Position numbers and translations under genes: made by a program. A stretch of DNA of 63,943 nucleotides, counting the filler, from Reticulomyxa filosa (lineage: Eukaryota; Protista; Foraminifera), in NCBI GenBank assembly GCA_000512085.1. It is 21 parts of 21 records of this genome, joined end to end, with 100 filler letters (N's around TTAATTAATTAA, not from the genome) between each part and the next. Parts side by side here need not be neighbours in the genome. Positions count along the whole stretch, not along the records: positions 41,927 to 49,271 come from ASPP01011061.1; 20 more parts are not named here. One strand, given 5' to 3'. This document shows positions 42,912 to 49,197 of the stretch, piece by piece. Below the pieces are notes generated by a model, which saw only the letters and a list, made by a program, of their open reading frames with translations, was not told the DNA's origin and ran no database searches. How positions within the stretch are numbered: position 1 is the first letter of the stretch; each line of letters opens with the position of its first letter.

Positions 42912-45661
42912 TCAATTCCTTATTTTTTCCTTTGCTTCAATTGTTTCGTCATGCCACTCTCCTAACACAACATTTGCTATTTTCCACGCCTCCTCATAAT
43001 ATTTTTGTGCTGTTTCAGTGTCTCCTTTTCTTTCAAACGACAATCCCAGATTCCAATTCGAATCACTAATATCTTGGGTCGCACCTAAAAATATCTCCTT
43101 CCTTATTTGCAATGCCTTTTCGTGATATTCTATGGCTTTGTCATATTGTCCTTTATCGTGATAGGCAATTCCTAAATTGTTATATGAATAACCAATATCA
43201 ACATGCTTGGGTCCAAAAATATCCAATCTTATTTTTAGTGACTTTTCATAACATTCAATGGCTTTGTCATGTTGTCCTTCGTCATTATAGACAATTCCTA
43301 AATTGTGATAAGATAAAGCAACATCAGCATGATTAGTTCCAAAGAGATTCAACCGAACATTCAAAGCTTTTTCGCAAAATTCAATTGCTTTATCAAACTG
43401 TCCTTTATCATGATATGCAAGTCCTAAATTGTTGTACGACCAACCGACATCAATGTGATTAGTCCCAAACATGGACAGTCTTATTTGCAATGCTTTTTCA
43501 TAGTATTCAATAGCTTCATCATGTTCCCCAATATTATCATGAATGATTCCTAAATTGTGATATGAAAAAGCAACATCAGCATGATTATTACCAAAAAGCG
43601 CTAATCGAATTGCAAGTGCCTTTTCATGGCAGTCTAATGCCTTGTTATGTTCTCCTTCATCATCATAGATAATTCCTAAATTATGATATGACCAAGCAAT
43701 ATCAACATGATTATTTTCAAAGATCTTCAATCTCAAATCCAAAGATTTTTCATTGTATTCAATTGCCTTTTGATATTGCCTTTTATCATGAAAGATCAGT
43801 GCCAAATTGTGATAGAATTGGGCAACAAAAGCATGCTTGGTTCCAAAATTATCCGCTATAATTTGCACTGCTTTTTCATATGTTGCAATTGCTGTAGCAT
43901 ATTGTGCACTGTCAGAATATGCATTTGCAATCATGTTATATGCGATAGAAACGTAAGGATGATTGCACCCAAATGCGTCAATACAAATCTGTAAATATTT
44001 TTGTAGATGAACAAGAGCGTCATCAAATAATTTTTTTTCCGAACATTGTTCTGCTTTGTCTTCAAGTTCTTGAAGTTGCAATGGAAGATCATGGTTTGTG
44101 TTGGTATTCCATTGTGAAATTGAAATGAACTGTCTTAACCTTTGATCAAAAATGGTATTTTTTGTCACAAATAATTGTGTTGTAATATTGACATTTGCTT
44201 GGCATTGAATTTCACAATTGATCGCATATACATTTCCGTCAATATTCACATCATTCAACACCACCAACTTGGTTTTAATTGCATACATCCAATATTCCCT
44301 AAATTGTTTTTTTTTCCATATTTTCTTTGTTCATTAACAGCATATGGAACGAATTAGCATCATTATTGACTGTAGTTGGATTTGTTGTATTTTGAGATGC
44401 AATAGCGTCATTGGTCACCACCACCAATCCTTGTTCGTTATTTTTCAGCATTTTCTCTACCATCTTTGCTGCTTCTACATTTGCTTTTCTCCAATATGTA
44501 TTCCAATGTTTCTTGAAATCTAAATTTTTTGGAGTGTCATCTATTAACACTGGTACTTCATATTTTTCTTCATCGTGACGAGATCGTGGTGTCAAATAAA
44601 TATCAGAATGAGTCGTTAAAATAGTTTGTATCACTTGTCTTTCTAACATTTGACCAAGAATAAGACTTTTCACTCTTTTAATGACAAACTCGAAGCTTTT
44701 ATCAATATTGTTTTCAATTACTTGGCAAAACACTTCAGTGAAATGACGCTCTTTCTTTTTATTGCCATTCCCTGCAGCTTCAGTGATAGAATTTCTTGGA
44801 TTATTCGCAAAAATTGTAAATATATCAGCATCGTGATTGTACCACAATCTTTTTTGATTATTTTCATTCACTCTTTTGATTTTCATTTGACTTGCTTTTT
44901 CTTGTTCTCCATATATAATTTTCATGAATATTTTTGGCTTCCCCATAAAATAATCAGTTCGAATTGCAAAATCGTCTTGAATATGTTTTAAAGGTTTGGT
45001 CTTCATATCACTTGTAATCAAATTATCTTCATTGCTCCCATATCCACACCATACAAATATCAACCCATCATAAGCATTTTTGTTATTGCTGCAATCATCT
45101 CTCAAATTCAAACAATGCTTCAAAATAAAATTGTTCAAATCATTCAAAGTAAGTGATTCCGAAGTTGGATTTTGGGAATTTAAGGTGTTGAATACATTAT
45201 AACCGAACTTTGTTTGAAATAATGTTTGCAATAAACACAGATCTTGCTTTGCATCTTCCAAATATGACTGCTGCTCATATTTTATTGCCCCTGCCAATAA
45301 TACTAACGGATTTTTTACTTCGTAGGATGACGCTCTTTTCTTTTGTGCGGTATCGTCTTTTTTGTTTTAAAATCCATTTTCATTGGTGTACTTTCTGTTT
45401 TGTATGAGTGTACAAAAAATGCAGAAAACCTGGTTGGAAATGTGCAGTAAAATGTGTTTGACCATCCTCGATAGCCAACTGGAGATGCTTATCTTTTTCA
45501 ATGTCGCAACCATCGCCATCAGTAATTTTAATCAACATGTTTGCTCGTTCGTCGAACTTGCTCTCTTCAATTATTTGTTTTTTTAAACAGTCGACAGTCA
45601 ACGTTGCCAATTTTAGCCGATATTTTTTGGAACCAATGGTTACAAACACATTCTGTGACAT
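42912..45661 (-). CDS. N-terminal PB1/CIDE-N-like domain + catalytically dead caspase-like domain + beta-rich linker + about 8 TPR (about 891 aa if the A9 frameshift is corrected)
   Basis: Phase-1 intron 45429-45357 joins ORF 45661 to the caspase-like frame (NPLVLLAGAIKY, YDGLIFVWCGYG, KPKIF). One A fewer at 44307-44315 fuses it to the TPR ORF (MEKKQFREYW-MYAIK). Confidence 0.75.
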
Positions 45662-45997
45662 TTCTAAAAGTTTTGAAGTTTCACAATAAAAAAATGATTA
45701 TGGATTACACTTTTTTTTTAAACCTTTTTTTTAACTGAAACAATAAAGCACATAACGACTAAATTTTGGACTAAACAATCAAATTTACATTGTATAGAAA
45801 ATTTAAAATGAAGTAAAGTTCAATTGTTGATCCCATAGATGCATTTTCAAAAAAAAAAAATGATTAATATATTGAAGTTTCCTTCTTCCGTGATCTTTCA
45901 CAAGTTCTAAAAATTCGATCCAATGATTTGAGAAAGTATTTCGAAGTGTACTTTTAAAAAAACCAACGTCAGGGGTGTCAAAGTGTTAATTTTGAAT

Positions 45998-47715
45998 ATG
46001 GACGAACATAGTCTAAAAGTGTCGTTCACCGAAGAATGCAAGAAGAAATTAAAGGAGGGAATCAATAATCCAACAGTATTGCAACAGTTGCAAAGTTGGT
46101 TGAAAACAACTAGCAGAAGTTTAGAAGAGTGCACTACAAAAAAAATGGACACAATTAACAAAATCTAAAACATGAAGAAAAACAATAGATTATCAAGATA
46201 AAGTGGAGGCATTGGGGAGCGAAGTCGAAAAGCAATTTGAGCATTTGAAAGCGGTAATAGTGGATAAAAAAGTGCAATTGCTGCAAGAGCTAGCTCGTCT
46301 GTCGGACAGGCATAACCACGAAATGGAAAGAGCGTCAAAAGTGTTAAAGCAGCACAAGATAAATTTAGGATTAAAAGCGACAGATGAAGAGCGATTAAAA
46401 AGTGGAATGGAGTCATTGCAATTATTGGATTGTTCTGTCAACAAAGAATTGCTTCACTTGTTGTCACAACAAATTTCATTGACCTATTTATCCGACGATT
46501 TGCCCTAAAGTTTTTTTTTTTTTTTTTACAAAAAAAAAAGCCACGTTATTTCATTATATACGTATACATCATATATTGTGTGACTCAGAGTCTGTCCAAA
46601 TGCTGGTTTGTAACCACGACAGTGAGTTCTACCATTGTGAATGAATGGTCCAAGATACTAGGTATTACTCTTGTGACCGCTGGAAATGTGCGTACTTGTA
46701 TTTTTGTTGCTGTGTACACACATACACCACCATTCACATATGCTGCAATATGAAATAGGAGATTTCAGATAAGATGTTGGATGAGAGAAACGGATTGCAA
46801 GAGAATATAAAGCAACTGAAATTGGAGGAGGAAATAATTGAAATGGGCCACTATGCACCTAATGACGAGCAACGCACATGCACTTTGGATCAAGTGCACG
46901 TGCAAAAACAAATCGACGTCCATCTATCACACCGGCAAAAGCAAGTCCCTCTGAAAAATGAAAAAGGAGAAGGTGATACTGACAATGGGAATGAAAAAGA
47001 ACGAAGACATGAAAATGACATGAAGAAGAAGAAACGAAAACACTCGAAAAAACAGAGCCATCATCAAAATAACGACGAAGAAGAGAGTCAAAATGAAGAG
47101 GATGAAGACGAGGACGATGAAAGTGATAGTAAGAGTTCGAGTGAAAGTGAAGATAGTGATGGAGATTACAAATCTGAAAAAAGTAGAAAGAGAAGCTTGA
47201 GCAATCACAAAAAAATACAGAGGGAACAAATCAAATATGTGAGCACCAAATTTTTATCACTTAGCGACGGAAAAGATAATTTAGGCCATAGTGTAATAGG
47301 GATATTCCCACTGTCACAACAAATTGATTTCGATTCGCTTTGCCAAACACATGAATCTGTTTGTGTGCGAAAGTTAAAGTGCAAGCTGAAACAATTTCTC
47401 CGTCAATTGGAAAAACAGAAACATGAACGAAAAGCCTCCAATCATGTTTTGGAGTTACAAATTCAGCGTATTACCCAAGTTATTAAAGCTATTTCGCACA
47501 AAACCACTGTCCACTATATGAGACTCTTCAAAGATTTTGACTTGTCTGAAACTTATTCCAATCTTTCGAAACATTATCAATTGGTACTCTTTTGTCGAGT
47601 TTTGTACACTCTTTTTTTTTTTTCCGTTAGTGCTTCTCCTCTTTTTTATAATTGTTTATTTGTGTGTTTTTTTACATAGAAATATAAATTACGAGGACAC
47701 AAAACGAGAAAATGA
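45998..47715 (+). CDS. Multi-exon coiled-coil protein with acidic/basic low-complexity region
   Basis: ORFs at 45983, 46203 and 46774 separated by intron-like segments; helical EVEKQFEHLKAVIVDKKVQLLQEL; transcribed divergently from the caspase-TPR gene. Confidence 0.6.
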
Positions 47716-48183: not shown

Positions 48184-49197
48184 TCAATGGAAATTAAAAA
48201 CAAACCTTAATTTGTTAATTTCCAAGGTAGCATTGGAAATCAAATGTATTTTAGAGTCGACGGCTCTTTTGACTTCGTTTTTTAATTCGTCAATTTCTTG
48301 TTGTTTATGTTGCAGTTGATGAACCAGTTCAGTCTCTCTCACATTGTTTGGCACGGGGCTGGATTCGACTTTCAGTTTTTCTCTTTCATTGCCGTTACTG
48401 TTGCCGTTGCCAGTGCCATTGGCATTGCCACTATTGGTACCATTACTGTCATTGCTGTAGACAGGTGGATGAACATCCGAAGGGATTATTTGTGGGGTGA
48501 TCACTTGCACGTTATTTTTCAAAGTGGTGTCATGACCAGATGTGTTCGGATTGCCACGGATATCTATAATCAAGTTATTGTTTACAAACAAACCAATTGT
48601 CCCACGTTTAAAAGTTGAAAAGCAAAAGAGTTTTATTATAATTATTAATATTATTATTATTATTATTTTTGGTCATTTTTGATTGAAAAAGTTGTATGAG
48701 ATGTACAATATCAAGGTTTTTTTTTTTTTTTTATCAATTCATTCGTTTTTGTTTATTTGAATTGGCAATGTCGAAATGCAAGCAACACACCACCAAACAT
48801 GGTATGTTTGTTTTGTTTGTGATGGAGACATGACCAGTTACAATTGCATTCTCTTCTTTCTGCTGTTACATATTTTTGCACAACAAACATTCATTCGCCA
48901 CACGTAATCATAGTTTTTTTTTTTTTTGTAGTACGAACACGCACACATACATACACAGACAATTTATACCACTCAATAAAAAACAAAATGATTTACCTCA
49001 ACGGGTTGAACGGAAGAGTCAGAGGGATGGGGAGGAGGATCACGCGGATTGAGTAGATGAGCAGGGTTCGTGTGATGGCTATTATCATTGGAAGGTTCCA
49101 AGCGAGTTCCGATTTTTATTTTTTGTTCTTCGATGCGATTTGTCTCGTGGGAACCACCACTACTTGGTTCGGGTATCTTTATCAAGTGTAAAGACAA
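48184..49197 (-). CDS. Low-complexity / coiled-coil protein, partial
   Basis: Exon-like ORFs at 48973 and 48184; NG repeats; C-terminal coiled coil. Confidence 0.55.

What the first reader, a model, noticed from the sequence alone, without database searches (positions are those of the whole stretch)
42912..45661. Receptor-like pseudo-caspase-TPR fusion with both catalytic residues replaced
Seen: three ORFs join via one intron and one homopolymer base into one protein of about 891 aa. It has a 77-aa N-terminal domain (ITDGDGCDIEKD), a caspase-fold-like block, a beta-rich segment (VVLNDVNIDGNVYAINCEIQCQANVNIT) and about 8 TPRs. Known: C14 peptidases use a His in (S/G)HG and a Cys in KPK-h-h-h-h-(Q/D)ACRG. 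Here these positions read CGYG and KPKIFMKIIYG, so both residues are absent. Inference: a dead caspase scaffold coupled to a repeat sensor and a PB1/CIDE-N-like oligomerisation domain, resembling effector-plus-repeat immune receptors or cFLIP-like decoys. It could recruit or inhibit active caspase-like paralogs in a protist defence or cell-death pathway.
Basis: partly seen in the sequence, partly recalled or inferred. Interest (0 to 1): 0.8.

Follow-up and report, generated by a model that had tools for sequence, protein, structure and literature searches.

The report
Dead caspase-TPR fusion gene in Reticulomyxa
This is one gene of the foraminifer Reticulomyxa filosa that joins a small PB1/CIDE-N-like domain, a caspase-fold domain with both catalytic residues changed to tyrosine, and eight TPR repeats; it belongs to a large species-specific family that is mostly catalytically dead and has not been described as such.

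Summary
The piece is Reticulomyxa filosa contig ASPP01011061.1. The three minus-strand ORFs are the gene annotated as hypothetical protein RFI_15137 (ETO22064.1, 868 aa).

- **Gene structure.** A 73-nt GT..AG intron (45357-45429) joins ORF1 to ORF2. Its position is conserved in 5 of 5 family loci examined. A one-base frame break in an A9 run (44307-44315) joins ORF2 to ORF3. Paralogs read straight through this point.
- **N-terminal domain.** The 77-aa domain folds confidently (pLDDT 90.5) as a beta-grasp. PB1 and CIDE-N are the top structural matches (Z 9.6 and 9.3).
- **Middle block.** It has no Pfam hit, but its model matches only caspases (Foldseek E 3e-7, Z 12.6). Paralogs do hit Peptidase_C14. 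Tyr (TAT) stands at both the His and the Cys site.
- **C-terminal part.** Eight 42-aa kinesin-light-chain-type TPRs follow a family-specific beta-rich linker.
- **Family.** Among 57 family representatives, His is kept in 22, Cys in 9 and both in 6. R. filosa also has intact-dyad caspases carrying the same beta-grasp domain.

A scaffold or regulator role (cFLIP-like decoy, or a repeat sensor) is plausible but untested. Expression is not shown, and the frame break may be an assembly error or a real lesion. I rate it a new variant of a known kind, of moderate to high interest.

The parts
45431..45661 (-). Exon 1: start codon and a 77-aa beta-grasp (PB1/CIDE-N-like) domain. Base 45430 is the first base of the split codon.
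   Evidence: AF2 with 36 family sequences gives pLDDT 90.5 and topology bb-a-bb-a-b. VIA-align: MAP2K5 PB1 Z 9.6, MEKK3 PB1 9.4, p62 PB1 9.4, FSP27 CIDE-N 9.3; ubiquitin-type rows 7.3-7.7. Foldseek top hits are NBR1 PB1 and CIDE-N. No Pfam hit for the window's copy; 6 of 36 members weakly match GRHL1_C.
45357..45429 (-). 73-nt GT..AG intron, phase 1, between the beta-grasp domain and the caspase-like domain.
   Evidence: Frame change and in-frame stop. The same intron is used by the GenBank model P0009. Same position and phase in L001, L002, L004 and L006; in L004 and L006 it carries in-frame stops. No RNA evidence is available.
44587..45312 (-). Pseudo-caspase domain (NPLVLL ... DIYLTP), with both p20-like and p10-like halves.
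   Evidence: AF2 pLDDT 55, pTM 0.59. Foldseek: caspase-3, -8, -7, -9, -11, Dronc and c-FLIP, E 3e-7 to 7e-6. VIA-align: Z 12.6, 183-190 residues aligned, model residues 3-241. Paralogs P0005, P0045 and P0013 hit PF00656. The window's copy has no Pfam hit.
45040..45042 (-). Tyr codon (TAT) at the catalytic His position (WCGYG).
   Evidence: The family profile aligns G-y-G to S-H-G of the caspase-6 large subunit. Family members with GHG occupy the same HMM column. Paralog L002 has CAT here.
44911..44913 (-). Tyr codon (TAT) at the catalytic Cys position (GKPKIFMKIIYG).
   Evidence: GKPKIF aligns to GKPKIF of caspase-6, and the Cys lies five residues on. Intact paralogs read KIACx or KNACRG in that column. 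Paralog L002 has TGT here.
44316..44586 (-). Family-specific linker (LDFKKHWNTYWRKANVEAAK..., GLVVV...).
   Evidence: Conserved in paralogs. Pfam gives no credible hit. No informative match for the Atlas's own model (TM below 0.45).
44307..44315 (-). A9 homopolymer where the reading frame breaks. One base fewer restores collinearity with paralogs.
   Evidence: Frames, run length, paralog alignment. L004 and L006 carry caspase-like domain plus TPRs in one uninterrupted ORF of about 690-735 codons.
44124..44306 (-). Beta-rich segment (QFREYWMYAIKTKLVVLNDVNIDGNVYAINCEIQCQANVNIT...), fold unknown.
   Evidence: Conserved only in R. filosa paralogs at E 1e-31 to 2e-41.
42915..44066 (-). TPR array: N-terminal cap helices, eight exact 42-aa KLC-type units (42969-43976) and a C-terminal cap. 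Stop codon at 42912-42914.
   Evidence: TPR_12 E 1.1e-86; TPR_10 and TPR_1 with 8 stretches each. 42-aa register. 126-nt period, 6.3 copies, 68% matches.

Best explanation
Shown. The locus 42912-45661 (minus strand) is a single Reticulomyxa filosa gene, RFI_15137. In order, it encodes:
- a beta-grasp domain of the PB1/CIDE-N type;
- a complete caspase-fold domain in which both the catalytic His and the catalytic Cys are Tyr;
- a family-specific linker with a beta-rich segment;
- eight kinesin-light-chain-type TPRs.

It is a typical member of a species-specific radiation of at least about 50 clusters at 50% identity. Most members have lost one or both catalytic residues.

Inferred. The protein is not a peptidase but a scaffold or regulator.
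- The TPR array binds a ligand or partner.
- The beta-grasp domain mediates head-to-tail homo- or hetero-oligomerisation, as PB1 and CIDE-N domains do.
- The dead caspase domain could pair with or titrate active paralogs, as c-FLIP does with caspase-8. R. filosa caspases with intact dyads carry the same beta-grasp domain next to the protease domain.

The recurrent Tyr at both sites is what an AT-biased genome produces once catalysis is dispensable: CAT to TAT and TGT to TAT are single transitions. The frame break in the A9 run is more likely an assembly error than a real lesion, but this is not settled.
For: - Identity of the gene: P0009 = ETO22064.1 maps to all three ORFs at 97-100% identity and lies on a 7345-bp contig.
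- Architecture continuous in paralogs.
- Caspase fold. Pfam C14 hits in paralogs.
- Dyad columns. Tally over 57 family representatives: His kept in 22, Cys in 9, both in 6; Y/Y in 14, H/Y in 13. In the other 75 representatives, 65 keep H and C.
- Family clade support is SH-aLRT 97. All 17 named members checked are R. filosa.
- Beta-grasp fold.
- The same beta-grasp HMM hits intact-dyad R. filosa caspases just upstream of their C14 domain: RFI_10549, RFI_11690, RFI_12165, RFI_04677, RFI_03392, and the proteins annotated 'caspase-3' and 'caspase 8-like'.
- Codons: TAT in dead copies against CAT and TGT in the intact copy.
- The nearest relatives outside the family are metagenomic C14 proteins fused to NACHT, WD40 or ankyrin repeats.
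Against: - There is no expression or splicing evidence.
- The assembled sequence carries a frame break, so the copy could be non-functional.
- The window's caspase-like block has no Pfam hit, and its AF2 model has low confidence (pLDDT 55). The fold call therefore leans on paralogs and on the consistency of the hits.
- No interaction, oligomerisation or activity data exist.
- PB1 or CIDE-N membership is at fold level only; no sequence-profile match was found.
- There is no NTPase switch domain, so the analogy with immune receptors is loose.
Confidence: 0.72

Rival explanations
1. The copy is a recently inactivated pseudogene. The extra A in the A9 run is real, and the locus no longer makes the full-length protein.
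For: The assembled sequence is out of frame at 44307-44315. Two other family loci also carry single frame breaks that the annotators bridged or split: L001 at a short T run, and L002 between RFI_15520 and RFI_15519. The breaks in L001 and L002 are not in long homopolymers. Large, fast-evolving families usually contain pseudogenes.
Against: There are no in-frame stops in about 891 codons of 32% GC DNA apart from the single break. All conserved family positions are intact. The break lies in a 9-base homopolymer, a classic site of sequencing error. From memory, unverified, this draft assembly included 454 reads; the genome paper is not held. All three breaks are indels and none is a nonsense change.
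Confidence: 0.25
2. The protein is a cytoskeletal or transport adaptor. Its KLC-type TPRs bind cargo or motors, and the dead caspase domain serves only as a structural module, with no link to cell death or defence.
For: The repeats are of the kinesin-light-chain / NPHP3 type (TPR_12 E 1e-86, TPR_NPHP3 E 3e-39). From general knowledge, R. filosa is known for intense microtubule-based transport.
Against: The Pfam scan named no family besides TPRs, so nothing suggests the heptad-repeat region that lets kinesin light chains bind the motor (the latter from general knowledge). The nearest non-family relatives of the caspase-like domain are fused to NACHT, WD40 or ankyrin, which are typical conflict-system architectures. 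The family keeps a few intact-dyad members.
Confidence: 0.15
3. The domain is still a peptidase that uses non-canonical residues, for example the nearly invariant Cys of the WCG motif.
For: The Cys two residues before the His site is conserved in almost all family rows. The core strands YDGLIFV and GKPKIF are invariant.
Against: Both dyad positions vary freely across the family (Y, N, G, W, F, S, T, I, E, K, H). This is the pattern of relaxed catalytic constraint. The same Cys occurs in intact-dyad relatives (ICGHG), so it is not a replacement nucleophile.
Confidence: 0.05
4. The three ORFs are separate genes or chance ORFs.
For: They are in different frames in the assembly.
Against: ORF2 has no ATG before residue 117 of its exon. 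Paralogs read continuously across both joints. L004 and L006 hold the caspase-like domain and TPRs in one ORF. The GenBank model also joins the three.
Confidence: 0.03

Closest known systems
c-FLIP and other metazoan pseudo-caspases
   Same: Caspase fold without a catalytic nucleophile. The c-FLIP protease-like domain (3h13) is among the Foldseek hits. Active paralogs in the same genome share the recruitment domain, as the DED is shared by c-FLIP and caspase-8.
   Different: The recruitment domain is a beta-grasp, not a death-fold domain. Both His and Cys are lost. A C-terminal TPR array is present. The family numbers dozens of members instead of one gene. No heterodimerisation has been shown.
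Bacterial pseudo-orthocaspases (Klemencic et al. 2019, PMC6426788)
   Same: C14 p20 domains with His changed to Tyr and Cys changed to Ser or other residues. One variant class (FS) is consistently fused to TPRs.
   Different: Those are prokaryotic p20-only proteins. Here both sites are Tyr, the fold has both p20-like and p10-like halves and resembles animal caspases, and the N-terminus carries a beta-grasp domain. This is a separate eukaryotic radiation.
Reticulomyxa caspase-like proteins reported by Klim et al. 2018 (PMC5982838)
   Same: Same organism and same C14 superfamily. Those authors reported that R. filosa proteases group with animal caspases.
   Different: That paper does not mention TPR fusions (0 occurrences of 'TPR'), and the passages I retrieved did not mention loss of catalytic residues or a beta-grasp prodomain. 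The intact-dyad clade (ICGHG / IDACRG) is distinct from the WCG(H/Y)G clade to which this gene belongs.
Caspase-like domains fused to NACHT, WD40, TPR or ankyrin sensors (CHAT / conflict-system architectures)
   Same: An effector-plus-repeat layout. The nearest non-family relatives are metagenomic C14+NACHT (P0071), C14+WD40 (P0056) and Ank+C14+Ank (P0055).
   Different: Those relatives keep the dyad, and some have an NTPase switch. The window protein has neither. The comparison with CHAT rests on general knowledge and was not tested here.
PB1 and CIDE-N domains
   Same: Beta-grasp fold with an acidic beta3-beta4/alpha2 stretch (DGDGCDIEKD). Best structural matches have Z 8.9-9.6.
   Different: No Pfam PB1 or CIDE-N match. 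Z is only about 2 units above generic ubiquitin-like domains. The conserved basic residue on beta1 of many paralogs is Asn in this copy. Oligomerisation was not tested.

Membership tests
Peptidase C14 (caspase) as an active enzyme | Caspase/hemoglobinase fold with p20 and p10 halves | tested here: met
   Foldseek E 3e-7, all top hits are caspases. VIA-align Z 12.6 over residues 3-241. The model's confidence is low (pLDDT 55).
Peptidase C14 (caspase) as an active enzyme | Pfam PF00656 match above the gathering score | tested here: not met
   No hit for the window's ORF2. Paralogs P0005 (E 2e-12) and P0045 (E 2e-11) pass, so homology is established through the family.
Peptidase C14 (caspase) as an active enzyme | Catalytic His in (S/G)HG | tested here: not met
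   WCGYG; Tyr codon at 45040-45042.
Peptidase C14 (caspase) as an active enzyme | Catalytic Cys in QACxG after KPK-hhhh | tested here: not met
   GKPKIFMKIIYG; Tyr codon at 44911-44913.
Pseudo-caspase acting as regulator of active paralogs (c-FLIP-like) | Shares a recruitment domain with active paralogs | tested here: met
   The beta-grasp HMM (A3) hits 7 intact-dyad R. filosa caspases directly upstream of their C14 domain, E 4e-8 to 9e-6 in a set of 166 proteins.
Pseudo-caspase acting as regulator of active paralogs (c-FLIP-like) | Heterodimerises with, and modulates, an active caspase | not testable with these tools
   Needs pull-down, activity assays or multimer modelling.
PB1 domain | Beta-grasp fold, bb-a-bb-a-b | tested here: met
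   pLDDT 90.5. PB1 domains score Z 8.5-9.6.
PB1 domain | Sequence-profile match (Pfam PB1), and an OPCA motif or conserved Lys used in front-to-back binding | tested here: inconclusive
   No PB1 hit among the families matched by more than one of 36 members. An acidic cluster is present, but its role was not tested.
CIDE-N domain | Fold and profile match | tested here: inconclusive
   Fold matches: FSP27 Z 9.3, DREP3 8.6, CIDE-A 8.0. No Pfam match.
TPR (TPR_12 / kinesin-light-chain type) | Repeated 34-aa helix pairs within 42-aa units; Pfam match | tested here: met
   TPR_12 E 1.1e-86. Eight units in exact 42-aa register.
NLR / STAND receptors | Central NACHT or NB-ARC NTPase domain | tested here: not met
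   No NTPase family was found in any of the three ORFs. A metagenomic relative, P0071, does have NACHT.

The most novel reading that the evidence does not exclude
The family could be an NTPase-less sensor/helper system of a giant syncytial foraminifer.

- Dozens of TPR-bearing, catalytically dead members such as this gene would act as ligand sensors or decoys.
- They would co-polymerise through the PB1/CIDE-N-like beta-grasp domain with the few intact-dyad beta-grasp caspases.
- This would trigger or restrain proximity-induced protease activation in defence, non-self fusion control or regulated cytoplasm death.
- The beta-grasp filament would then be a functional replacement for CARD/DED death-fold assemblies.
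Probability: 0.2. Interest if true: 0.85.

Novelty: new variant of a known kind. Interest (0 to 1): 0.6.

Why it matters
Caspase-type (rather than metacaspase-type) proteases outside animals are rare and debated. R. filosa is the protist usually cited for them, and one of its sequences serves as the outgroup in animal caspase trees.

This locus shows three things about most of the R. filosa 'caspase' complement:
- it forms a lineage-specific radiation of pseudo-enzymes fused to TPR sensors;
- the family's prodomain is a beta-grasp of the PB1/CIDE-N type rather than a death fold;
- active and dead members share that domain.

This makes a concrete hypothesis testable: polymer-driven regulation of caspase-like proteases arose independently of death-fold domains. 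It also warns that a count of C14 homologs in this genome is not a count of active proteases.

Tried and rejected
- **RNA and DNA reads.** The look-up of sequencing runs listed no run. Read laying was therefore not used, and splicing and the A-run could not be checked.
- **Sequence-only searches of the window's caspase-like block.** Pfam gave nothing. phmmer against PDB gave nothing. The family profile against PDB gave only E 0.4 and 0.9 to caspase-6 and caspase-3, though in the right register.
- **Alternative ORF2-ORF3 joins.** I considered a 40-nt GT..AG intron at 44299-44338, and the 46-nt intron of the GenBank model at 44325-44370. I rejected both because they delete about 13-20 residues that are collinear with paralogs (NDANSFHMLLMNKENMEKK against NDNFSSFITSISSESIDKK).
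- **The GenBank model's 24-nt in-frame intron (44666-44689).** It removes part of helix alpha5 of the caspase fold, which paralogs retain. It is probably an annotation artefact.
- **Beta-rich linker.** The Atlas search gave no usable match.
- **N-terminal domain.** The word-index search found only the protein itself.
- **Genome paper.** The R. filosa genome paper is not held, so the sequencing technology is quoted from memory only.
- **dN/dS.** Not attempted, because the closest paralog is only 61% identical and synonymous sites would be saturated.
- **Joined model.** I did not build, fold or search a joined 891-aa model. Exons were searched separately by reference, and the database model P0009 was used where a full-length entry was needed.
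Full report
**Origin and gene model.** Paralog searches with ORF2 returned only Reticulomyxa filosa proteins (E 5e-81 to 1e-40). The exhaustive profile search returned as top hit an 868-aa protein, P0009. P0009 maps at 97-100% identity onto all three ORFs. It is ETO22064.1, 'hypothetical protein RFI_15137', on the 7345-bp contig ASPP01011061.1, which is this piece. The finding is therefore an annotated but uncharacterised gene of a foraminifer.

**First joint (ORF1 to ORF2).**
- ORF1 (45380-45661) ends its conserved part at ..HFTAHFQP.
- A GT follows at 45429-45428, and an AG ends at 45357. This gives a 73-nt phase-1 intron.
- The GenBank model uses exactly this intron.
- An intron lies at the same codon position and phase in four other family loci: L001 (62 nt), L002, L004 and L006. 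In L004 and L006 it contains in-frame stops, so it must be spliced out there.
- ORF2 has no ATG until residue 117 of its exon, so it cannot stand alone.

**Second joint (ORF2 to ORF3).**
- ORF2 runs into a stop just after an A9 run at 44307-44315.
- One base fewer gives ..NMEKKQFREYWMYAIK... This is collinear residue for residue with paralogs (..SIDKKQFKDYWVYIIK..).
- The GenBank model instead bridges the break with a 46-nt 'intron' (44325-44370) and removes 24 nt at 44666-44689. Both delete sequence that paralogs keep, and I regard both as annotation patches.
- In L004 and L006 the caspase-like domain, linker and TPRs lie in a single uninterrupted ORF of about 690-735 codons. The fusion is therefore real in the family.
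- Whether the window's extra A is an assembly error or a real lesion cannot be decided here, because no reads were listed.
- L001 and L002 also carry single frame breaks, but not in long homopolymers. I give the pseudogene rival 0.25.

I did not construct or search the joined protein. The pieces were analysed by reference.

**N-terminal domain (45431-45661).**
- With 36 family sequences, AF2 gives pLDDT 90.5 and the topology b1-b2-a1-b3-b4-a2-b5.
- Unbiased structural comparison ranks PB1 domains first: MAP2K5 Z 9.6, MEKK3 9.4, p62 9.4, Par6 9.1, NBR1 8.9.
- CIDE-N domains rank alongside them: FSP27 9.3, DREP3 8.6, CIDE-A 8.0.
- Ubiquitin-type rows score 7.3-7.7. Foldseek agrees.
- No Pfam PB1 or CIDE-N match was found. 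The only family hit by several members is GRHL1_C (6 of 36, best E 3e-4).
- The result is therefore a PB1/CIDE-N-like fold, with family membership not shown.

**Caspase-like domain (about 44587-45312).**
- The window's copy has no Pfam hit. The family profile reaches caspase-6 and caspase-3 in the PDB only at E 0.4-0.9.
- That alignment is nevertheless in exact register: G-y-G aligns with S-H-G, and GKPKIF aligns with GKPKIF.
- Paralogs P0005 and P0045 pass Pfam Peptidase_C14.
- The AF2 model has low confidence (pLDDT 55, pTM 0.59), but its order of secondary-structure elements is that of a caspase.
- Every one of the top 50 Foldseek hits is a caspase or the c-FLIP protease-like domain (E 3e-7 to 7e-6).

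**Catalytic residues.** In the family HMM alignment the window reads Tyr at the His column and Tyr at the Cys column. Intact relatives read GHG and (A/G)CRG in the same columns. The tallies over representatives with both columns aligned are as follows.

| Set | Representatives | His kept | Cys kept | Both kept | Commonest states |
|---|---|---|---|---|---|
| WCG family | 57 | 22 | 9 | 6 | Y/Y 14, H/Y 13 |
| More distant relatives | 75 | not tallied | not tallied | 65 | H/C 65 |

- The family forms one clade (SH-aLRT 97), but its interior is a poorly resolved radiation.
- On that tree the His state needs at least 11 changes and the Cys state at least 9.
- The codons explain the recurrent Tyr. 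The intact paralog L002 has CAT and TGT, while the dead copies have TAT at both sites. Each change is a single GC-to-AT transition in a 32% GC genome.

**C-terminal part.** A family-specific linker and a beta-rich segment, found only in R. filosa paralogs, precede eight exact 42-aa KLC-type TPR units at 42969-43976. Cap helices flank the array.

**Context in the genome and beyond.**
- All named family members are from R. filosa.
- The same species has a second clade with an intact dyad (ICGHG / IDACRG). Some of its members are annotated 'caspase-3' or 'caspase 8-like'.
- The beta-grasp HMM also matches directly upstream of the C14 domain in that clade. There the sensors (Kelch or TPR_12) lie N-terminal to the module.
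- The nearest relatives outside the species are metagenomic C14 proteins fused to NACHT, WD40 or ankyrin repeats.

**Literature.**
- Klim et al. 2018 reported caspase homologs in Reticulomyxa, with no mention of TPRs.
- Later papers use one of these proteins as an outgroup.
- Pseudo-orthocaspases with Tyr/Ser dyads, and an FS variant fused to TPRs, are known in bacteria.
- I found no description of this family's architecture or of its loss of catalytic residues. Absence from the held library is not proof that none exists.

**Mechanism.**
- Shown: the domain order, the folds, the loss of the dyad, the family radiation, and the beta-grasp domain shared with active paralogs.
- Inferred: the protein is a non-catalytic scaffold or regulator. 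Its TPRs bind a partner, and its beta-grasp and pseudo-caspase domains engage other family members, including active ones.
- A defence, allorecognition or cell-death role is speculation by analogy. A cytoskeletal adaptor role is a live rival.

**Verdict.** The feature is a new variant of a known kind, with interest 0.6.

Noticed in passing
window 44325-44370 and 44666-44689 (minus strand): The GenBank model RFI_15137 contains a 46-nt and a 24-nt 'intron'. They remove sequence conserved in paralogs, including part of helix alpha5 of the caspase fold. They look like gene-finder patches around a frame break rather than real introns.
   Followed up: partly
L001:790-830 (ASPP01003686.1, RFI_04018): This paralog has a one-base gap in ..GTT(T)GGTGTGGATATGG.., which hides its WCGYG motif. 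The annotation skips it with a 26-nt 'intron'.
   Followed up: partly
L002:1435-3902 (ASPP01011397.1, RFI_15520 + RFI_15519): The family member that keeps both His and Cys (GHG, KIACY) is annotated as two adjacent genes, C14 and TPR. These are one family-type gene split by a frame break near L002:2600-2660.
   Followed up: partly
P0102 (RFI_12165), P0130 (RFI_04677), P0147 (RFI_03392): Intact-dyad R. filosa caspases have the opposite domain order: Kelch or TPR_12 repeats, then the beta-grasp domain, then C14 at the C-terminus.
   Followed up: partly
P0071, P0056, P0055 (metagenomic contigs, ENA/JGI): The closest non-Reticulomyxa relatives of the caspase-like domain are fused to NACHT, WD40 or ankyrin repeats and keep the dyad. 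Their organisms are unknown.
   Followed up: no
window 45983-47679 (+ strand) and 48184-48591 (- strand): Neighbouring ORFs encode Lys/Glu/Ser-rich, coiled-coil-like proteins with no significant Pfam match. The annotation calls two uncharacterised genes here, of 167 and 362 aa.
   Followed up: partly
Family N-termini in P0001, P0012, P0015, P0020, P0024, P0043: Many deposited family models read through the conserved intron after the beta-grasp domain, giving spurious ..(S/P)SFFF.. stretches. Protein-level comparisons of this family need re-annotation first.
   Followed up: no
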